In this document: positions 44,947 through 59,562 of the stretch, in pieces
Numbering within the stretch: the stretch's first letter is position 1
How the letters are laid out: every line of letters begins with the position of its first letter
Notes under the pieces: model-generated
The model's database searches: none
What the model saw: only the letters and a program-made list of their open reading frames with translations
What the model was told of the DNA's origin: nothing
Made by a program: the position numbers and the translations under genes
Sequence record: JN849462.1
DNA: 64,000 nt
Direction: 5' to 3' (one strand)

Positions 44947-45471
44947 CTATTTGCGCCCTTTACGATTTGCCTTATTTGCTTTTCTTTTTGCTCTACGCAA
45001 TTCTTTGCGTTTTGCGATTTTGTCTGCACGTCTAACTGCATCATAATCCGCAGCACACGACGCAGCAAACGCATCAGGCTTGAAAACGGGTTCTTGACCC
45101 ACGTATCCCAAGATAGTGCCCTTAGCTTCGTTATACGCAACGTGTGAACGATGGGATGGGTCTGGGTTGATGTCAACGTGAACTTCAAACCCACGAGTAC
45201 CACACATTGGCTTAACACGCAGGGCGGTTTCACCTGCTTTATAGACTTCATTCATCAAACGACTACGAATACCATCTTTACAAGACATGTACGCTGGTTC
45301 AGTTTCGATAGATTTGAATACTTGAGCGCCTTTACTACCCTCAAGGTGAATGATGATTACAGTAGCGTAACTAATCATATCACTCTTACGCTTGCTATCA
45401 CACCCAACATAAATCGTACTGTTCGGATGACTGTTATTGATAGCTGTTTCAATTGCTTCCCAATCGAACAT
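44947..45471 (-). CDS. RNase H-like YkuK-family protein
   Basis: IYVGCDS, EVYK, EVHVDINPD, AADY. Confidence 0.75.
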   Translation of the reverse strand: MFDWEAIETAINNSHPNSTIYVGCDSKRKSDMISYATVIIIHLEGSKGAQVFKSIETEPAYMSCKDGIRSRLMNEVYKAGETALRVKPMCGTRGFEVHVDINPDPSHRSHVAYNEAKGTILGYVGQEPVFKPDAFAASCAADYDAVRRADKIAKRKELRRAKRKANKANRKGRK

Positions 45472-45521
45472 TTTCACCTCTGTACAAAAAAGGGCAGCAC
45501 AATGCCGCCCTTATCACTTAT

Positions 45522-46958
45522 TTAAAAGCTGTAGCGATCAACGCCTACAGTTTTCAGCATGATCTTGACTGGCTCAAGCTCACCACCCAACAGTGAAGTC
45601 AGGATAGATGGGCTACAACCCGATACCAGTGCAGTACCCGCTTCGCCAGCTTTAACCGGAACGTTGCCAAGACGACCACGAATGTTCCAGAAGACCAGTT
45701 GTGGCATTTCATAGCCAGCACGTGCGTACATAGCTTTGATTGCGTCGAAGTTTGCACGTTCTCCGCGACCGTACCAGCCACCACCAGTATTTGCTTGGTC
45801 GAATTCCATGTCGCTCATGATAAGCAACTTAGTCGGCATTTCTTCTTGTGAAAGATTTGCACGTTTCGCACGTTCTAACAGAACGTTGAAGCACTTACCG
45901 ATGTTTGTGCTCATGTCTTCGCCTGATCGATTCATGTTGTCAAGACGCTCTTTTAATGAGCTACCGCGTAACTGGTGGAAGTGCGGATCGCTTGAGAACG
46001 AAATGAACTGATCTTTGAAGATGCCTTCATTGCGTTCAGCAACATAGATGCCAAGAGACATTGCAACTTGCTTACAAGTAACGCCTGAGCGGTCTGTACC
46101 TGCGTTGATTGGCGTGCTCATAGAGCCAGACACGTCAACAACTGGGATGATGCGCTCATCAGAGCCTTCCATGTAGTTCGGCAGAGCTTTCCATTGCTCG
46201 TTCGCTACAGACGCATTACCATGACTAACGCTCTTAACGACATCATATGGGAACAAAGCACCAGCGTTGATCTTCGCTTCACCTTTTTGAAGCGACTCGA
46301 TGTAGCTTGTGTAACGAGCAGAAGCGTTACGACCGAATGCTTGTTGATAACGAGCAGACGCTACAGATGGCAACTTACCGAAGTCGATTGCATCCCATTC
46401 TTGCGCACACATCTTCTGTTCAACAGTGTCAGACAAAAGTGCTAGAATCTTACGCCACTGCTTCGCAGTTACACCAAGAGACTTGATTGTGCGCTTGAAC
46501 ACATGACCGTTTTTGCTGTTCTCGCGTGGGAACCACTTCGCAGCGAGACCGTTCTTGTCATTTACAATCGCATTTGACCACAGCGTGATCGCGTCTTTTT
46601 CAAGACTTGTGCCGAAAGCAGAAATCAAGTCGTCGAAACGACCTAGTTCTGGAATTTTCGACATTACAGCACGAGCTACGTCAGGCTGCTCATTACAAAG
46701 CTTAGTGAATAGAGTACGGAAAGTACCACGTTCACCCGCACCACCGCGAACATCACGAGACCACAAAAGAATGCGTGTCGCTAGTTCTGGGTTTTCTGCA
46801 AACGCACGACCGAACAGTGTTTTAGACTGATCGTTACCACGCATAGCAGCAATACCGAAGAACAAGTTTAGACACTCGTTACCTGAAGTGCTGTGAGTAA
46901 CTGCACCGTTTGCTGTACGTGAATCGTTAGTGGTCATTGCGTTCATAAATGCTGACAT
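45522..46958 (-). CDS. TROVE/Ro60-like protein with C-terminal vWA domain (DUF2828 type)
   Basis: T.NGA, SRDVRGGAGER, GRFDDL, AAKWFPRE, KINAGALFPYD, MIDAS DVSGSM, SDMEFD, LVFWN, LVSG.SPS. Confidence 0.8.
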   Translation of the reverse strand: MSAFMNAMTTNDSRTANGAVTHSTSGNECLNLFFGIAAMRGNDQSKTLFGRAFAENPELATRILLWSRDVRGGAGERGTFRTLFTKLCNEQPDVARAVMSKIPELGRFDDLISAFGTSLEKDAITLWSNAIVNDKNGLAAKWFPRENSKNGHVFKRTIKSLGVTAKQWRKILALLSDTVEQKMCAQEWDAIDFGKLPSVASARYQQAFGRNASARYTSYIESLQKGEAKINAGALFPYDVVKSVSHGNASVANEQWKALPNYMEGSDERIIPVVDVSGSMSTPINAGTDRSGVTCKQVAMSLGIYVAERNEGIFKDQFISFSSDPHFHQLRGSSLKERLDNMNRSGEDMSTNIGKCFNVLLERAKRANLSQEEMPTKLLIMSDMEFDQANTGGGWYGRGERANFDAIKAMYARAGYEMPQLVFWNIRGRLGNVPVKAGEAGTALVSGCSPSILTSLLGGELEPVKIMLKTVGVDRYSF

Positions 46959-46992
46959 TGTTTATTCCTCATATTAAATTGCTGTAAAATGT
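46953..46992 (-). promoter_or_regulatory. putative translational operator hairpin of the TROVE-like gene
   Basis: mRNA GACAUU-UUA-CAGCAA-UUUAAU-AUGAGG-AAUAAAC-AAUGUC; GACAUU pairs with AAUGUC, which contains the AUG. Confidence 0.65.
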
Positions 46993-47007
46993 CGTTTTGA
47001 TGTGATG

Positions 47008-47037
47008 ATTATACACGGATTTGAACCTGTGTAAACA
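47008..47037 (-). promoter_or_regulatory. early promoter of the TROVE-like gene
   Basis: GTTTAC-17-TATAAT. Confidence 0.7.
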
Positions 47038-47050
47038 CTTTTTTCAATTT

Positions 47051-47365
47051 TTATCGAAAATTCATTCGAGTTAGATTCGTACCGTTTTCGTGAATCTCAA
47101 CTAGCACGCGACCGCCCGTTTCATAAGACGTTCGGAGAGAACGATAACCATGCTCTTCGAAGAATGTACGAATAATAGTCGCACCACGCTTGTCTTTATC
47201 AGCAGCGTGAATGGGCACTTTTACGATGATAGGGAAACTAGACCCTGACTCAACTGCGTGCATGAATTCTTTCTCACATTCGCTCGTGTAATGCTCGATA
47301 AGAATTCGTTTTTCTTCTGCTTCACGAGCGTGAATTTGTTGTTTGAGTTCATTATGATTAATCAT
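47051..47365 (-). CDS. hypothetical protein
   Basis: Coupled ORF. Confidence 0.55.
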   Translation of the reverse strand: MINHNELKQQIHAREAEEKRILIEHYTSECEKEFMHAVESGSSFPIIVKVPIHAADKDKRGATIIRTFFEEHGYRSLRTSYETGGRVLVEIHENGTNLTRMNFR

Positions 47366-47697
47366 TGAAACCCCGCTTGTTTGTTTTCTCGAATTGTCAA
47401 TTTGACAAAAGAATATGAGTAATCTCTCATATCACGCGGATCGCCAGAGTAATGTCCGAACTGTGCGTCGAAGTTATGAAAACCCTCGCGTCGCATGACG
47501 CCTTTGATGAGAGACATCATTTCATCACAACATTCATTGCGGTCAACATTCACCTGAATCGTGATTGGAAACTGAAACCCAGCAACGCCACCGATTTTAC
47601 GTTCGATTGCTTTGCGCATTTCAACTACGAAGAGTTCTTCACGAGTTGAGCGATTCTGTTTGACTTTTTGAATTAATGTATCGTATAAATTACCCAT
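47362..47697 (-). CDS. hypothetical protein
   Basis: Start reassigned; AAGGA RBS. Confidence 0.55.
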   Translation of the reverse strand: MGNLYDTLIQKVKQNRSTREELFVVEMRKAIERKIGGVAGFQFPITIQVNVDRNECCDEMMSLIKGVMRREGFHNFDAQFGHYSGDPRDMRDYSYSFVKLTIRENKQAGFQ

Positions 47698-48064
47698 CAA
47701 TATATTCCTTAATCGGCTTAGAAAAGTGACGAATACAAGAACTGTCAAGTCGTTTACGACCATCACCATCTATATCAGGTAGTGTGTATTCGTCATTAAA
47801 CGGCTGACCGCTTTCTTTCGCAATCTCATAGGCATCGGCTCGATTGAAGTATTCACCACAATAGTTGATAAACCCTTGACCGCGATCCCCGAGTTCGTTT
47901 CGATGTTCATATGTACAACCTAGTTCTTTCAATAACTTAAAGACTGATTGCATGTTTCGACCGAAATGGCAGCTATCAGCAACAACAATGTCGCGCACTT
48001 CACCGTTCGGTAGTGTTACTCGAATTGCATTAGCAGCAGACGATATTACATTGACGTGCGACAT
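47690..48064 (-). CDS. hypothetical protein
   Basis: CHF...QGFI...GEYFNRADAYEIA. Confidence 0.55.
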   Translation of the reverse strand: MSHVNVISSAANAIRVTLPNGEVRDIVVADSCHFGRNMQSVFKLLKELGCTYEHRNELGDRGQGFINYCGEYFNRADAYEIAKESGQPFNDEYTLPDIDGDGRKRLDSSCIRHFSKPIKEYIDG

Positions 48065-48405
48065 GTATCGTACCTCATAAAAATTGAACCAACGCGCTTA
48101 TACTGACCAGAGTGAGAAAGCAACAGAGCCATTTTACTATGGCCAACGGGATTGCTTGTCACTAGAACAACAGTGCGCGGAAAATTACGATGATCAATCG
48201 CATGAGAGAGAATATCATACCCCTCTCTACCAACATCATCACCTAGGTCATTGTCCATGAATAGCGTGATGTCAGTTAGATTTGTGTGCTTGACAAAATT
48301 CATACCGTCTTCGAATGTACGAAGAACTAGCTTTTCATCGTCGCGTACATAATCTGACGTGTATTTGTCAATACTGCGAAGATCATCAATCATAACGTAG
48401 TACAT
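48046..48405 (-). CDS. cyclic-phosphate-processing receiver-like domain protein
   Basis: IDDLR, RTFED, MDNDLG, GYDIL, TSNPVG. Confidence 0.6.
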   Translation of the reverse strand: MYYVMIDDLRSIDKYTSDYVRDDEKLVLRTFEDGMNFVKHTNLTDITLFMDNDLGDDVGREGYDILSHAIDHRNFPRTVVLVTSNPVGHSKMALLLSHSGQYKRVGSIFMRYDTCRTSM

Positions 48406-48467
48406 AATATTTCTCTTTCGATAGTGTTGATAAATACATCATACAGGTTCAACAAACGGAAGTCAAC

Positions 48468-48839
48468 ATGAACGACGAAAAAATTATTTCTTTTGATGAA
48501 TATCTAAATGAAGGGTGGTTTGAAAGGCAATGGGCTAGATATAAGGCAGGTGAAGATGCACGCAGCATAAAGAAACTAGCTAAGATGCATACCAAGCTTC
48601 TGCACATCGAACAGAAAGCAAAGCAAAACAAATACCGATACGAAGCCGTACGGTTCAACTACGAACACATCAAAATGAATGTGCTCGATGCCAAGAAGCT
48701 AATTAACAAGCTGCGATACAAGAAAGGGATTAGTCAAGAGCTAGTTCAGGCAATGGATAAACTAGACATTGAACTTGATAGACTCAACGACTTTGCCGTT
48801 GAGGGATTGCATGAGCTAATGATTCAACATAAGCTATAA
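48468..48839 (+). CDS. late protein, internal-head-like
   Basis: SFDEYLNE N-terminal motif; GATAAATA upstream. Confidence 0.5.
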   Translation: MNDEKIISFDEYLNEGWFERQWARYKAGEDARSIKKLAKMHTKLLHIEQKAKQNKYRYEAVRFNYEHIKMNVLDAKKLINKLRYKKGISQELVQAMDKLDIELDRLNDFAVEGLHELMIQHKL

Positions 48840-48869
48840 AAGAAAAGCCCCGTTTTGGGGCTTTTTTGT

Positions 48870-49082
48870 TTAATGTGAGTGGCGTAACTTCTTTTCGATC
48901 ATTCGATCTACAATCGTGGAGTACATAAGATGCTCTTTGTAGTATTTCTCATCAACTCGGTTGCACTGGAATTGTCGAAAATCTTTGCGTAAGCGGGCAA
49001 TGAATTTATTAAGTGCTTTGCGCACTTTGCAAACTTCAGACAGTTCCATGCTTTTTAGTGTATCTTCAGAAAGTATTTCCAT
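48870..49082 (-). CDS. hypothetical protein
   Basis: GAGG RBS. Confidence 0.5.
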   Translation of the reverse strand: MEILSEDTLKSMELSEVCKVRKALNKFIARLRKDFRQFQCNRVDEKYYKEHLMYSTIVDRMIEKKLRHSH

Positions 49083-49110
49083 GATTGTTCACCTCTTAGT
49101 TAATAGAATA

Positions 49111-49156
49111 CGGGAGACACGGGAATCGAACCCATTGCCTTGACCACATATCTCCC
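49111..49156 (-). ncRNA. 46-nt mini-tRNA (acceptor stem, D-loop remnant and T-arm; no anticodon arm)
   Basis: GGGAGAU-AUGUGGUCAAGGCA-AUGGG-UUCGAUU-CCCGU-GUCUCCC-G. Confidence 0.55.
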
Positions 49157-49180
49157 ACTGAGAGTTACGCCAATCTGATT

Positions 49181-49405
49181 TTAATGTGCTAGACTCATCA
49201 AACGGCGCATACGTTCGCGTTCTGAAAGCTCATCTAAATTATCTACTTTCACCTCTTTGACTTCTTCTTTCGGCTCTTCTGTCTCATCTGTTTTACGAGC
49301 ATCGGGACCGATATTTTTCCAAAGTGGACTATTGCGCCAGTTGTCGTTGAAACCATTGCCTAGACCACGCCCTTCGCGTGCGTGCGATTTGTTATGAATG
49401 CTCAT
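49181..49405 (-). CDS. small charged protein
   Basis: Coupled ORF. Confidence 0.5.
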   Translation of the reverse strand: MSIHNKSHAREGRGLGNGFNDNWRNSPLWKNIGPDARKTDETEEPKEEVKEVKVDNLDELSERERMRRLMSLAH

Positions 49406-49608
49406 TATTCGTTTGATTTCTTTGTTACTTGTCTTGCAATACCTACAGCAGCAGCACCAGCAGCTACTTTAGCACCTGTCTTTGCCGCTTTACCGGCTTT
49501 CTTTGCACCAGACTTGACACGATCTTTGATAGAACGTTTCTTTTTCTTATCTTCTGGTCGAGATTCTTCAATTTCTGACATGAATTTGTCAAAGGTCTTT
49601 TCACTCAT
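49405..49608 (-). CDS. small basic internal-head-like protein
   Basis: KTFDKFMSE motif; K/A-rich. Confidence 0.5.
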   Translation of the reverse strand: MSEKTFDKFMSEIEESRPEDKKKKRSIKDRVKSGAKKAGKAAKTGAKVAAGAAAVGIARQVTKKSNE

Positions 49609-49645
49609 GACTTATCTCCAGTTAGTTGAGTTCATTTGTATTTAG

Positions 49646-50023
49646 TCATGAAAAATCGAACTTTCGGGTTAATTGCACATCAAATTTGCGCTCGAAACGA
49701 CAACGCTCAGTACCGTAAAGCACATCATCGAGCGTAAAGCGTTTACGTTTTTGCGTGTGTAGGTTCATATAACGCTCTAGAGCAGCTTCTGAGTCGAATT
49801 CAATACGTTCACAACGTCTTTGTTCGGATGTCTGAGAATAATCGCTTACAACGCGATACAGAAACAATCCGCGTATCACAACTGCATTAAGAGAATTTGA
49901 AGTTTTTACAGTAACGCCGTCAATATCACCGAATTCACTCATGGTAAAGATGATCTCTGAGTCTGGCATTTCAGCGACGCGCTTCATTTTAGCTATTGAT
50001 GTTCGTTTATTAGATTTGTACAT
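49646..50023 (-). CDS. hypothetical protein
   Basis: GAGG RBS. Confidence 0.5.
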   Translation of the reverse strand: MYKSNKRTSIAKMKRVAEMPDSEIIFTMSEFGDIDGVTVKTSNSLNAVVIRGLFLYRVVSDYSQTSEQRRCERIEFDSEAALERYMNLHTQKRKRFTLDDVLYGTERCRFERKFDVQLTRKFDFS

Positions 50024-50070
50024 TTTATCACCTCATAACGACTGTACACGATTTATCAGACACCATAAAC

Positions 50071-50095
50071 AAAAAAACCTGCTCAAGGCAGGTTT
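50071..50095 (-). terminator. terminator closing the RNA cluster
   Basis: AAACCTGC-CTTGA-GCAGGTTTTTTT. Confidence 0.75.
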
Positions 50096-50110
50096 AGATG
50101 TGCAATACAC

Positions 50111-57654: not shown

Positions 57655-57894
57655 TGGCGCCGCTCGTGTGAATCGAACACACGTCAAACACAACACCTCG
57701 TCCACCCGATTAGAGTTTCGAAGTAAGAGCTAATCAGCATTTCGGAGCAGTCGAGCGTTATTTCTACGAGTGAGCTTTCGACAACTCACACGCACTTTCT
57801 ACTCAGTCCCAGTGATTCGGTACCAACACAGGTTGCGAACCTATGTCTGCACTAATGTTGGGAAAACACTGCGTATTGTACACCAGTTAGCGGC
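57655..57894 (-). ncRNA. 240-nt tmRNA-shaped RNA with CCA end
   Basis: GCCGCU/AGCGGC acceptor, no D-stem, 8-bp helix in the anticodon position, GAC-GUGUG-UUCGAUU-CACAC, G73, CCA. Confidence 0.65.
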
Positions 57895-57901
57895 ATTTTA
57901 T

Positions 57902-58132
57902 TTAAAGATAGCTGTCAAAGACATCATCATCAACTTCTTCAATATTGATGTCAGCGTAACATTCATTCGCAATTGCTTGAATTTCATCTATTGAAACTGT
58001 ACCTGAGTACAAAACAACAGCGTCATTCGGAATCACAACATCACACATGTATTTGTTAAACATTGCAGTTCTGAAATCAGAATCAACAGAGTAATCATGC
58101 ATCGAAGTGATAACTAGCAATTTATGTGACAT
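57902..58132 (-). CDS. acidic hypothetical protein
   Basis: GAGG RBS; early promoter upstream. Confidence 0.5.
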   Translation of the reverse strand: MSHKLLVITSMHDYSVDSDFRTAMFNKYMCDVVIPNDAVVLYSGTVSIDEIQAIANECYADINIEEVDDDVFDSYL

Positions 58133-58210
58133 AATGTTTTCCTCGTGTAGTTGATAATGTGTATACTACACGTTGACGAAACGCCTGTCAACAACTTTTT
58201 CAATTTAATT

Positions 58211-58288
58211 TGGTGACCCCAACAGGGCTCGAACCTGTAACCCACCGATTATGAGTCGGTTGCTCTAACCTAGTTGAGCTATAGGGCC
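58211..58288 (-). tRNA. tRNA-Ile2(CAT), lysidine type
   Basis: GGCCCTATAGCTCA...CTCATAA, ileX-like body, CCA. Confidence 0.82.
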
Positions 58289-58289
58289 A

Positions 58290-58658
58290 TCATTTCTCTA
58301 GAAATCTACCAACTTTAGCAGCGAAGATGTTTGCTTCTTCTGCAATCAAAGCAGTCGATTTCATTTGATGAAAAGCGTCTTGTTGATGTAGAACATCTAG
58401 CTTACCCGCGCATTTCATCAGTTCTTTTACTGATTGCATAATCTCAATGTTATCAAGCTGACTAGTATCAGGGTGATGATTTAGATTATCTAAGATAGGG
58501 AGTACTTGTTGATAGCAACCCATACCGATGAAGTTTATCATAAGTCTGTACTGCATTTCAACAGCAAATGTACAATATTTTCGAAGATTGCGTTTTACAA
58601 TCTCACAGCGATGCAAGATACAATCAAGTTCGTCATTTATGTCATCAAACTTATTCAT
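58290..58658 (-). CDS. hypothetical protein
   Basis: GAGG RBS. Confidence 0.5.
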   Translation of the reverse strand: MNKFDDINDELDCILHRCEIVKRNLRKYCTFAVEMQYRLMINFIGMGCYQQVLPILDNLNHHPDTSQLDNIEIMQSVKELMKCAGKLDVLHQQDAFHQMKSTALIAEEANIFAAKVGRFLEK

Positions 58659-58672
58659 AAAACCTCGAAAAT

Positions 58673-58796
58673 TGGTGGAGAGTGATGGATTTGAACCACC
58701 GACCAAAAGATTTACCTAGTTATTAAGGTTTGCAGCATGAATGCTTGTCAGTATTCTTTAACATTCTTTTGCTCTACCAGACTGAGCTAACTCTCC
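58673..58796 (-). ncRNA. tRNA-shaped RNA with motif insert, anticodon undefined
   Basis: GGAGAGU/ACUCUCC-A-CCA; insert hairpin loop UGACAA followed by AUG-CUGCAA. Confidence 0.72.
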
Positions 58797-58805
58797 ATAA
58801 TTTGA

Positions 58806-58920
58806 GGGTGAAGTACAGGACTCGAACCTGCGACCTCCGGCGTGCATGTAAATGCAGAATGAAATCTTATCAGACTTCGTTTTTTGAGCCGGCATTCTAA
58901 CCAACTGAACTAACTTCACC
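58806..58920 (-). ncRNA. tRNA-shaped RNA with motif insert, no CCA
   Basis: CCGGC/GCCGG anticodon stem; GAAGUC-UGAUAA-GAUUUC followed by AUU-CUGCAU. Confidence 0.7.
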
Positions 58921-59037
58921 ATAGTGATCAACAGCCCTCAGAATACCCGCAGTCTACACCCTATAATAAGGGACTATACTGAGTCGTTTAATGAGTCGGA
59001 TAACTCAACTGTTAATCAAATTGTTAAAAACATATAG

Positions 59038-59160
59038 TTGCGGGTGCAGGATTCGAACCTACATCACGATCTTATGAATGATATGCGAAATTGATTGCCG
59101 TACAGATTCTTATCAGAATCAGTTTTGTGCTACGTGTGCTACCACTTACACCAACCCGCA
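59038..59160 (-). ncRNA. tRNA(CAT)-shaped RNA with a 50-nt insert, no CCA
   Basis: Insert after position 28; GAUUC-UGAUAA-GAAUC followed by GUA-CGGCAA; 8-nt loop AUUCAUAA. Confidence 0.7.
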
Positions 59161-59424
59161 ACTATATGCTTTCGGGATGCTTACGCAGGTTCTTCTCTAC
59201 GTAAGCACAGATCCTCAATGTATATTTTGCCTTAGCTAATCACAACACAACCCAATATCGTGCGCTTTAATTACGGGATTGATGACCCGTTCGCATGTGA
59301 TTAGCGTAAAAGTATGATTACGCACCTTTTCTTCTTCAATGTCCAAGGCAAAGAGGACTATGAATACCAGTGCGAGAAGATATACAATCAAATTGCTCAC
59401 CTCGCTTAATAAGTGAGAGTACAT

Positions 59425-59547
59425 TGGTCGAGTGTAACGGAATCGAACCGTTCCCACGATCTCCCTATGATATGCGTAAATTGGTTGCTGAATATAATCA
59501 TGTCTGATTACAGTATGCTACGTGTGCTGCCACTACACCAACACTCG
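59425..59547 (-). ncRNA. tRNA-Pro(AGG)-shaped RNA with a 49-nt insert
   Basis: C1-G72, A73, CCA; loop AUAGGGA; GUAAUC/GAUUAU hairpin followed by AUU-CAGCAA. Confidence 0.72.
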
Positions 59548-59562
59548 ACCAATATACTCTCG

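What the first reader, a model, noticed from the sequence alone, without database searches (positions are those of the whole stretch)
45522..59547. Candidate phage Ro60/TROVE-like RNP system: one protein, about 11 RNAs sharing a helix-NNN-C(A/U/G)GCAA motif
Seen in sequence: on the transcribed strand, the same module recurs in the TROVE-like gene leader (46953-46992), RNAs A, B, D, E and F, and five tRNA-shaped RNAs. The module is a 5-7-bp helix, then 3 nt (2 in D), then CAGCAA, CUGCAA or CGGCAA. Helix sequences differ between copies, but the pairing and the spacing are kept. Established: Ro60 (TROVE+vWA) binds a bulged helix in Y RNAs, and bacterial YrlA RNAs mimic tRNA. Inference: the DUF2828-type protein binds this motif, which differs from the GNCGAA(N)G motif reported for bacterial Y RNAs. 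The RNAs may be scaffolds, decoys or sensors linked to tRNA damage. I know no description of this RNA family, but novelty needs a literature check.
Basis: partly seen in the sequence, partly recalled or inferred. Interest (0 to 1): 0.95.

Follow-up and report, generated by a model that had tools for sequence, protein, structure and literature searches.

The report
Ro60-like phage protein with partner RNAs
A Vibrio phage gene for a Ro60-shaped protein sits beside about eleven small RNAs that share one short signature, and the same gene-plus-RNA pairing recurs in hundreds of phages and in giant viruses, so it looks like an undescribed branch of the Ro60/Y-RNA particles.

Summary
The window is Vibrio phage phi-pp2, a KVP40-type phage.

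- **Protein.** Gene 45522-46958(-) carries Pfam DUF2828 and DUF7788. Its AlphaFold model matches only Ro60/TROVE structures over its full length, and it has a vWA MIDAS motif.
- **RNAs.** Eleven elements on the same strand share a helix, a 2-4 nt spacer and then U-N-C-N-G-C-A(A). They are the gene's 5' leader, five Y-RNA-like RNAs closed by a 5'/3' stem, and five 113-126 nt tRNA-shaped RNAs in which the helix is a local hairpin. The bare hexamer is not enriched, but the structured module is. The helices covary and the signature is invariant.
- **Association with the gene.** A covariance model built from phage copies gave 76 of 76 hits on the gene's strand in 80 unrelated phage contigs. It gave 91 of 95 on the gene's strand in giant-virus contigs. 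Most hits lie just 3' of the gene, and some sit in its leader beside the ribosome-binding site. The module is also present in E. coli phages SUSP2 and Bas63 and in mycobacteriophage Faith1. It is absent from the syntenic T4 region.
- **Novelty.** No Rfam family covers these RNAs. The closest match, below threshold, is the Dictyostelium Class I RNA.

Direct binding and biological function are inferred, not shown.

The parts
45522..46958 (-). Ro60-fold protein gene (478 aa): DUF2828 helical-repeat part plus DUF7788 vWA domain with MIDAS D275-x-S277-x-S279
   Evidence: Pfam; PHROG 850 'RNA-binding protein'; AlphaFold pLDDT 77, pTM 0.75; Foldseek top 10 all Ro60/TROVE; 46% identical to Bas63 gp130.
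47008..47035 (-). Sigma-70-type promoter of the gene (TTTACA-16-TATAAT, 11 of 12)
   Evidence: Best promoter-like site in the region; conserved in relatives.
46954..46993 (-). Leader copy of the module: GACAUU-UUA-CAGCAA-(loop with GAGGAA)-AAUGUC. The start codon lies in the 3' strand of the stem. Proposed translational operator.
   Evidence: Sequence; R1 14.9 bits, E=0.38; compact equivalents 4 nt before the Shine-Dalgarno sequence in L031, L059, L052 and L038.
45490..45512 (-). Intrinsic terminator after the gene
   Evidence: 10-bp GC-rich stem followed by a T run.
50109..50357 (-). Long stem-closed RNA: AGACAUU-GUA-CAGCAA ... 230 nt ... AAUGUCU-GU, followed by terminator 50095-50075
   Evidence: Closing stem kept at distances of 132-254 nt in 6 phages; terminator.
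52384..52599 (-). Long stem-closed RNA: AGACAAU-AUA-CAGCAA ... 197 nt ... AUUGUCU-GU
   Evidence: Kept in 5 phages; compensatory AGAUAAU/AUUAUCU in phage 1.081.O; interior shares a 78-nt block with the RNA at 50357-50109.
53212..53327 (-). YrlA-like RNA: GAGUGUU-UU-CAGCAA, hairpin, T-arm (GGGGUUCGAUUCCCU), hairpin with a D-like loop, then AACACUC-AGU
   Evidence: RNAalifold consensus with covarying T-arm and hairpin; R1 23 bits, E=0.0026.
53894..53954 (-). Minimal 61-nt RNA: AGCAAUC-UUU-CAGCAA-(interior)-GAUUGCU-GUU
   Evidence: Stem covaries: GCAAUC, GUAAUC, GGAUAC; R1 20.2 bits; Rfam Dicty_Class_I_RNA 27.4 bits, below threshold.
55038..55129 (-). 92-nt RNA: UAGCUUGC-AUA-CUGCAA ... GCAAGCUG-UAU
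   Evidence: 8-bp closing stem, identical in KVP40, ValKK3 and nt-1, so no covariation is available.
56999..57116 (-). tRNA-shaped RNA L5, with GAUAC-UGACAA-GUAUC hairpin, GCUC spacer and CAGCAC in place of an anticodon loop
   Evidence: Rfam tRNA 49.8 bits with a long insert; alignment and covariation.
58673..58798 (-). tRNA-shaped RNA L4 (hairpin, AUG spacer, CUGCAA)
58806..58921 (-). tRNA-shaped RNA L3 (hairpin, AUU spacer, CUGCAU)
59036..59162 (-). tRNA-shaped RNA L2 (hairpin, UGUA spacer, CGGCAA)
   Evidence: GenBank tRNA-OTHER.
59425..59550 (-). tRNA-shaped RNA L1 (hairpin, UAUU spacer, CAGCAA)
   Evidence: GenBank tRNA-OTHER; ARAGORN.

Best explanation
The gene encodes a Ro60-type ring protein (a helical-repeat TROVE-like ring plus a vWA/MIDAS domain). 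I propose that its RNA ligand is a helix end whose strand runs on into single-stranded N-U-N-C-N-G-C-A-A.

**Ligand forms in this phage**
- Y-RNA-like RNAs have 5' and 3' ends that form the helix. They range from a 61-nt minimal form to a YrlA-like form with a T-arm, and two are long RNAs of 216 and 249 nt.
- tRNA-shaped RNAs carry the module where the anticodon loop would be.
- All are transcribed with the tRNA cluster from early promoters and would be cut out with the tRNAs.

**Proposed autoregulation**
- A copy in the gene's own 5' leader places the ribosome-binding site and the AUG inside or beside the module.
- Free protein should therefore repress its own translation, and the RNAs should titrate it. 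This would keep protein and RNA in balance.

**Proposed activity**
- By analogy with Ro60/Y RNA, the RNAs would gate the ring and tether it through their tRNA-like parts to tRNA-handling enzymes or host exoribonucleases. The particle would then act on damaged or misfolded RNA during infection, or as a counter-defence factor.

**What is shown and what is inferred**
- Shown: the fold, the conserved module with covarying helices, and the gene-RNA linkage across phages and giant viruses.
- Inferred: direct binding, autoregulation, and the cellular target.
For: **Fold**
- The model's best ten PDB matches are all Ro60/TROVE structures over its full length.
- The MIDAS motif is invariant.

**Module**
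- The signature is invariant in 39 stem-closed RNAs and in 25 tRNA-shaped RNAs.
- The helices covary.

**Linkage of RNA and gene**
- Hit density is about 18 times higher in the 150 nt after the stop codon than far from the gene.
- R1 gave 76 of 76 hits on the gene's strand over 1.3 Mb.
- R1 gave 91 of 95 on the gene's strand in giant-virus loci, none of which were used to build the model.
- The reverse test gave 22 of 52 against 1 of 26.
- The same RNAs occur in SUSP2, Bas63 and Faith1.
- No other neighbouring protein is conserved.

**Leader**
- Copies beside the Shine-Dalgarno sequence occur in five lineages.
- A promoter lies just upstream.

**Function lead**
- Bas63 gp130, 46% identical, was reported to counter the 'ppl' defence. 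Its authors guessed that some neighbouring tRNA genes are Y RNAs (PMC11482910).

**Precedent**
- Thermus phage phiLo Ro60 binds two phage Y-like RNAs and host PNPase (PMC12135203).
Against: - There is no binding or expression data for any of these RNAs.
- The protein does not match Pfam TROVE or any PDB Ro60 sequence. The fold match is moderate (TM 0.5-0.6) and rests on a model with pLDDT 77.
- R1's seed sequences were chosen for having a stem, so the pairing statistics are partly circular.
- Thirty of the 52 good RNA-pattern matches had no gene within the fetched stretch. This may only reflect short flanks.
- The leader stem in the KVP40 group shows no covariation, because its 3' strand is coding.
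- The negative control in a phage that lacks the gene is one 8-kb T4 region.
Confidence: 0.72

Rival explanations
1. The module is bound by another factor, either a host protein or another phage protein. On this view the DUF2828 protein only works in the same pathway and does not read the motif itself.
For: No binding data exist. The RNAs sit in tRNA clusters, where many enzymes act. In Dictyostelium the look-alike Class I RNA is reported to bind an RRM protein, Rnp1A/CIBP.
Against: The only protein that travels with the RNAs across Vibrio, E. coli and Mycobacterium phages and giant viruses is DUF2828. Copies in the gene's own leader are hard to explain otherwise. These hosts share no obvious common factor.
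Confidence: 0.13
2. The element is a cis-acting signal of the operon, such as an RNase processing site, a 3'-UTR stabiliser or an attenuator. It would then not be the core of separate trans-acting RNAs.
For: Many copies lie immediately after the stop codon or in the 5' UTR of the gene. In tRNA clusters the copies start just after tRNA 3' ends.
Against: Copies lie up to 13 kb from the gene in this phage, and tandem arrays occur in giant viruses. Some carry complete permuted or unpermuted tRNA-like domains with covariation. The stems are 7-8 bp with large loops and usually have no U tail.
Confidence: 0.08
3. The five long tRNA-shaped genes are decayed or intron-bearing tRNAs, as GenBank labels them. 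Their resemblance to the other RNAs would then be chance.
For: They are annotated tRNA-Pseudo or tRNA-OTHER. L3-L5 pass the Rfam tRNA threshold. L4 has an AUGUUAA stretch that could be read as an Asn anticodon loop.
Against: ARAGORN assigns a different anticodon in each relative, and U33 is absent. The insert is the best conserved part, with an invariant signature and a covarying hairpin in 8 phages and in phiWae14, L054 and L057. Pseudogenes would not keep this.
Confidence: 0.07

Closest known systems
Ro60 (TROVE + vWA) with Y RNAs, including bacterial Rsr/YrlA/YrlB and Thermus phage phiLo Ro60/Yrl1-2
   Same: - The predicted protein has a ring-plus-vWA fold with a MIDAS motif.
- The RNAs are encoded next to the gene on the same strand.
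- They are closed by a 5'/3' stem, with a conserved motif just inside the 5' strand.
- Some have a permuted tRNA-like domain with a T-arm, a closed acceptor hairpin and a D-arm.
- There are several RNAs per protein.
   Different: - There is no sequence match to Pfam TROVE or to PDB Ro60.
- The motif is N-U-N-C-N-G-C-A-A, not GNCGAA(N)G.
- Rfam YrlA scores only 20-30 bits against a threshold of 69.
- An extra class of unpermuted tRNA-shaped RNAs carries the motif in the anticodon arm.
- The gene's leader carries a copy.
- Chen et al. 2014 searched only genomes annotated with a TROVE domain.
Dictyostelium Class I RNAs (Rfam RF01414)
   Same: - Both have a short stem (6 bp in Class I, 6-8 bp here) joining the 5' and 3' ends.
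- The conserved motif directly follows the 5' strand and contains UUACAGCAA.
- Both are about 50-65 nt long with an A/U-rich variable interior and a 3' C-UG(U) tail.
- The genes occur in clusters.
- The consensus of R1 and that of RF01414 read almost alike.
   Different: - The phage copies score 27 bits against a threshold of 41.5. Other phage and giant-virus copies do not match at E<=1.
- Class I RNAs were reported as unique to Dictyostelia and as binding an RRM protein.
- They have their own DUSE promoter.
- Whether Dictyostelium has a DUF2828 gene could not be checked.
Phage T4 stable RNAs rnaC and rnaD
   Same: They occupy the same genomic position, at the end of the tRNA cluster near genes 1, 57A and 57B. 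They are 119-139 nt, tRNA-associated and of unknown function.
   Different: They have no U.C.GCAA module, and T4 has no DUF2828 gene.

Membership tests
Ro60 / TROVE protein family | Sequence match to the Pfam TROVE domain (PF05731) | tested here: not met
   hmmscan at E<=10 lists DUF7788, DUF2828 and weak VWA_CoxE, with no TROVE hit. phmmer and a profile search against PDB find no Ro60.
Ro60 / TROVE protein family | Helical-repeat ring followed by a vWA domain (fold) | tested here: met
   Foldseek top 10 are 9kop, 9l5y, 1yvr, 1yvp, 2i91, 9nfa and 9nep, at E 1e-7 to 7e-6, TM 0.50-0.59 and 510-577 aligned columns. The model has pLDDT 77.
Ro60 / TROVE protein family | MIDAS motif DxSxS in the vWA domain | tested here: met
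   D275, S277 and S279 are invariant in 38 homologues. CDFSGSM is present in the giant-virus homologue.
Ro60 / TROVE protein family | Binds Y RNA on the outer ring surface | not testable with these tools
   Only genomic association is available.
Bacterial Y RNA / YrlA (RF02553) | Reaches the Rfam gathering score (69 bits) | tested here: not met
   The best window match is 29.8 bits and spans two adjacent tRNA-like genes. Faith1 scores 21.7 bits.
Bacterial Y RNA / YrlA (RF02553) | GNCGAA(N0-1)G motif near the 5' end | tested here: not met
   The motif here is N-U-N-C-N-G-C-A-A. In the Faith1 alignment it occupies the same place as GNCGAA.
Bacterial Y RNA / YrlA (RF02553) | 5'/3' closing stem, encoded near the protein gene on the same strand | tested here: met
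Bacterial Y RNA / YrlA (RF02553) | tRNA-like domain (T-arm, closed acceptor stem, D-arm) | tested here: met
   Window RNA 53327-53212 has a covarying T-arm. Full permuted domains are present in L037, L038, L070, L075, SUSP2 and Faith1. The minimal and long forms lack this domain.
Dictyostelium Class I RNA (RF01414) | Reaches the Rfam gathering score (41.5 bits) | tested here: not met
   27.4 bits in the window and 26.9 bits in SUSP2. There are no matches at E<=1 in 10 phage loci or 8 giant-virus loci.
Dictyostelium Class I RNA (RF01414) | 6-bp terminal stem with the conserved 11-nt motif next to the 5' strand, 42-65 nt long | tested here: met
   Window RNA 53954-53894 and many phage and giant-virus copies fit this build. 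The criteria come from PMC7919456.
Dictyostelium Class I RNA (RF01414) | DUSE promoter about 60 nt upstream; restricted to Dictyostelia | not tested
   This is a eukaryotic promoter element and is not expected in phages.
tRNA (RF00005), for the five long RNAs | Cloverleaf with a 7-nt anticodon loop, U33 and a stable anticodon identity | tested here: not met
   Acceptor, D and T arms match at 50-55 bits for L3-L5. A 40-50 nt conserved insert replaces the anticodon loop. ARAGORN's anticodon calls differ between orthologues.

The most novel reading that the evidence does not exclude
The stem-NUN-CNGCAA RNAs may be the general RNA partners of the whole DUF2828 branch of Ro60-like proteins, from phages to giant viruses of eukaryotes. 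On this reading the Dictyostelium Class I RNAs are the cellular members of the same RNA family. Class I RNAs are abundant, developmentally regulated, have no known mechanism, and were thought unique to social amoebae. They would then work as Y-RNA equivalents bound by a DUF2828/TROVE-like protein. They may have been acquired from, or shared with, giant viruses.
Probability: 0.4. Interest if true: 0.92.

Novelty: new variant of a known kind. Interest (0 to 1): 0.85.

Why it matters
**Scale.** DUF2828 proteins are very common. There are more than 7,700 clusters at 90% identity. The gene is in 711 of 50,697 phage records, including Felixounavirus, Listeria, Staphylococcus, Campylobacter and mycobacteriophage cluster L. 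It is also in giant viruses and plants. It is usually labelled 'hypothetical' or loosely 'RNA-binding'.

**What the finding gives.** It supplies a concrete RNA ligand, a recognition signature and a covariance model. Structure and binding work on a second type of Ro60/Y-RNA particle becomes directly possible.

**What it explains.**
- It accounts for a class of 'pseudo-tRNA' annotations in large phages.
- It offers a mechanism to test for the reported anti-defence role of Bas63 gp130.
- It offers a testable answer to what Dictyostelium Class I RNAs bind.

Tried and rejected
- **Bare hexamer counts.** They show no enrichment, so the hexamer alone is not evidence.
- **A 6-bp stem scan.** About 45% of hexamers pass it, which is too permissive. 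I moved to stems of 7 bp or more and to a covariance model.
- **MAFFT on full-length short RNAs.** It misaligned the 3' stems. I replaced this with a gap-free alignment in which the interiors were trimmed. The cost is that R1 scores RNAs with long interiors poorly: the two long RNAs and L1 reach only 10-11 bits.
- **R1 hit at 44960-45005(-).** It scores 18.1 bits, has GAGCAA rather than C.GCAA, and lies inside the DUF458 gene. I treat it as a false positive.
- **CUGCAA at 50741.** It follows a GC hairpin with no spacer and no U at position -2, so I do not count it.
- **A MotA-box or promoter reading of TTGCTG on the opposite strand.** I dropped it because the element is strand-specific with the gene and sits in covarying RNA helices.
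- **Conserved protein partners.** DUF458, cREC_REC and the arn.3-like gene are limited to the KVP40 group.
- **A Dictyostelium DUF2828 protein.** I tried to find one through homologue names and cluster look-ups and through the literature. No organism names were returned, so the question stays open.
- **Papers I could not read.** Burroughs & Aravind 2016, Avesson 2011 and the supplement of Chen 2014 were not available.

Full report
**Identity of the window.** The region is 100% identical to Vibrio phage phi-pp2 (JN849462.1; window coordinate = record coordinate minus 124000). This is a KVP40-type member of the Straboviridae. Between the tail-fibre genes and genes 57B/57A/1 lies a minus-strand block with 28 ARAGORN tRNAs. 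GenBank labels several long tRNA-like genes there as tRNA-OTHER or pseudo-tRNA.

**The protein.**
- Gene 45522-46958(-) encodes 478 aa with Pfam DUF2828 and DUF7788 and belongs to PHROG 850, 'RNA-binding protein'.
- Sequence searches find no TROVE domain and no solved Ro60.
- An AlphaFold model built on 38 homologues has pLDDT 77 and pTM 0.75. Its ten best PDB matches are all Ro60/TROVE structures over their full length: Xenopus Ro60, Thermus phage phiLo Ro60 and human Ro60 complexes (E 1e-7 to 7e-6, TM 0.50-0.59). vWA/MIDAS domains follow.
- The MIDAS signature DVSGS is invariant. The protein is therefore Ro60-like by fold and domain order, but not by sequence family.
- The family is very large. 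It has more than 7,788 clusters and occurs in 711 phage records across many host genera. In mycobacteriophage cluster L it is already annotated 'Ro-like RNA binding protein'.

**The RNAs in the window.**
- The hexamer alone is not enriched, but the structured module is real.
- *tRNA-shaped RNAs.* Five RNAs of 113-126 nt (L1-L5) have acceptor, D and T arms. Where the anticodon loop should be, each has a conserved insert: a 6-bp hairpin capped by a G-N-N-A tetraloop, a 4-nt spacer, then C-N-G-C-A.
  - I anchored 25 such RNAs from 10 phages on the motif only. In that set the hairpin is 98% paired and all six pairs show double changes. G9, U21, C23, G25, C26 and A27 are invariant.
  - ARAGORN gives them different anticodons in different relatives, so they are not intron-bearing tRNAs.
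- *Stem-closed RNAs.* In five further RNAs the helix before the motif is the stem that joins the 5' and 3' ends.
  - Three are short: 53954-53894 (61 nt), 53327-53212 (116 nt, with a T-arm) and 55129-55038 (92 nt).
  - Two are long: 52599-52384 and 50357-50109. The last is followed by a terminator.
  - RNAalifold predicts the closing stems on orthologues found by BLAST, with compensatory changes, and leaves the motif unpaired just after the 5' strand. In phage 1.081.O the stem of one long RNA changes from AGACAAU/AUUGUCU to AGAUAAU/AUUAUCU.
- *Leader.* The gene's own leader, transcribed from the best promoter match in the region, folds as GACAUU-UUA-CAGCAA-(Shine-Dalgarno)-AAUGUC, with the AUG inside the stem.
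The refined signature is helix, 2-4 nt, then U-N-C-N-G-C-A(A).

**Does the RNA go with the protein?**
- I fetched 80 unrelated viral contigs that encode a homologue at 46-55% identity.
  - A strict scan required a stem of at least 7 bp, a 2-4 nt spacer and C.GCAA. It found 235 hits on the gene's strand and 105 on the other strand.
  - Hit density was about 18 times higher in the 150 nt after the stop codon than far away, and 50 of 80 loci had a hit within 700 nt.
- A covariance model (R1) was built from 39 copies with trimmed interiors. In that alignment U11, C13, G15, C16, A17 and A18 are invariant.
  - R1 gave 76 hits at E<=1 in 1.3 Mb, all on the gene's strand. Many were not in the seed.
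  - The syntenic T4 region has no DUF2828 gene, gave no hit, and its stable RNAs rnaC and rnaD lack the motif.
- The reverse test searched the viral collection for AGAAU..N.U.CAGCAA...AUUCUG.
  - Among 78 new loci, 52 had the two free stem positions complementary; about 11 would be expected by chance.
  - Of those 52, 22 had the gene within the short flank. Only 1 of the 26 non-complementary matches did. The gene was always on the same strand, 23 to 0.
- No other neighbouring protein is shared across these loci.

**Breadth.**
- *E. coli phages.* SUSP2 has four copies (AGACCNN-NUN-CAGCAA...NNGGUCU-GG) between its tRNAs, just after the gene. One of them has a full permuted tRNA-like domain. Bas63 gp130 is 46% identical to the window protein (E 9e-144), and Bas63 has the RNAs among its tRNAs.
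- *Mycobacteriophage.* Faith1 has three copies right after its 'Ro-like' gene. The middle copy aligns end to end with Rfam YrlA at a sub-threshold 21.7 bits, and its CUACAGCAA sits where YrlA has GNCGAA.
- *Giant viruses.* A match in a giant-virus metagenome bin led to 80 further loci with DUF2828-type genes.
  - R1 was trained only on phage copies. It gave 95 hits there, 91 on the gene's strand, mostly just after the gene, often in tandem arrays and next to tRNA clusters.
- *Other T4-like phages.* The L-type tRNA-shaped form also occurs in T4-like phages that carry the gene: phiWae14, L054 and L057.
- *Leader copies.* Compact leader copies lie 4 nt before the Shine-Dalgarno sequence in four more lineages.

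**How it most likely works.**
- *Shown.* The protein has a Ro60 fold. The conserved RNA module has covarying helices. Gene and RNA are tightly and reciprocally linked on the same strand across distant viruses.
- *Inferred.* The protein binds the helix-plus-single-strand module. The leader copy acts as a translational operator, so the RNAs titrate the repressor. The tRNA-like parts recruit tRNA enzymes or exoribonucleases, as Y RNA tethers PNPase to Rsr and as phiLo Ro60/Yrl binds host PNPase.
- *Functional data.* The only functional data come from a preprint in which deletion of Bas63 gene 130 made the phage sensitive to the 'ppl' defence. Its authors speculated that some nearby tRNA genes are Y RNAs. 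I therefore favour a role in counter-defence or RNA surveillance, with moderate confidence.

**Comparison with what is known.**
- This is the Ro60/Y-RNA principle with a different protein sequence family, a different recognition motif and an extra RNA form.
- Chen et al. 2014 looked only at genomes annotated with TROVE, and their phage example is ET08. Iyer et al. 2021 mention ROT/TROVE proteins in some jumbo phages without describing RNAs.
- Rfam 15 has no family for these RNAs.
- The nearest Rfam model is Dictyostelium Class I RNA, whose consensus GaUcuC-CUUACAGCAAU...GagAuC-UG matches the 61-nt window RNA at 27.4 bits.
  - The published definition fits the phage copies, and the giant-virus copies especially. 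That definition is a 6-bp terminal stem, an 11-nt motif next to the 5' strand, 42-65 nt, a 3' CUGU and clustered genes.
  - Formal membership fails on score.
  - I could not establish whether Dictyostelium has a DUF2828 gene. The domain is present in plants and in mimivirus-like sequences.

**Verdict.** The RNA family appears undescribed, and the system is a new variant of the Ro60/Y-RNA kind that is widespread in viruses.

Noticed in passing
window 59714-59697 pairing with 59580-59563 (-): An 18-bp long-range helix (AUAUUUUAAAUGUGCGUU / AGCGCACAUUUAAAAUAU) encloses about 115 nt just 5' of L1. It is conserved in ValKK3 and nt-1 and looks like another structured RNA of unknown role.
   Followed up: no
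window 50357-50109 and 52599-52384 (-): The interiors of the two long stem-closed RNAs share a 78-nt paralogous block at 73% identity, which is also kept in relatives. Its structure was not analysed.
   Followed up: no
window 49180-49083, 56127-55686, 57901-57642 (-): Further intergenic stretches contain T-arm-like GGUUCGAnnCC hairpins but no U.C.GCAA module. These may be other tRNA-derived RNAs.
   Followed up: no
window 48046-48405, 47690-48064, 44947-45477 (-): The genes flanking the Ro60-like gene carry Pfam cREC_REC (cyclic-phosphate processing receiver), a T4 arn.3-like protein and RNaseH_like/DUF458. This linkage holds only in the KVP40 group, not in 80 other phage contigs.
   Followed up: partly
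window 55832-55804 and 55749-55721 (-): Two copies of an 83-nt repeat each carry a TTTACA-17-TACAAT promoter-like site, inside the tRNA cluster.
   Followed up: no
L009 (E. coli phage SUSP2) 8868-9038: The annotated CDS gp132 lies over a stem-CAGCAA RNA and a tRNA, so it is probably not a protein gene. Small ORFs in the phi-pp2 tRNA block may be similar.
   Followed up: partly
L091 (phage T4) 2909-3172 (-): T4 rnaC and rnaD sit at the position syntenic to the phi-pp2 long RNAs. They lack the module. rnaD has a CCUGAGUAAGG hairpin that only loosely recalls the L-RNA hairpin top.
   Followed up: partly
L282 4880-5320, L251 5490-5775, L246 8100-8530 (giant-virus metagenome bins): Tandem arrays of 50-55 nt stem-NUA-CAGCAA-stem-UGU RNAs lie next to DUF2828 genes and tRNA clusters. 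In L282 two alternating unit types repeat.
   Followed up: partly
phage contigs L047, L061, L063, L065-L067, L076, L078, L083, L088 (about 20-100 nt after the gene): A long subtype (115-180 nt) uses CUGCAA or CCGCAA and ends with a conserved ACAGGGUUAGAAGUAAAUGCCCC element before the 3' stem strand.
   Followed up: no
short-form RNAs in L012-L027: Besides the main CAGCAA, the interior repeats AAGCAA and UAGCAA once or twice. This suggests more than one protein contact or multimer binding.
   Followed up: no
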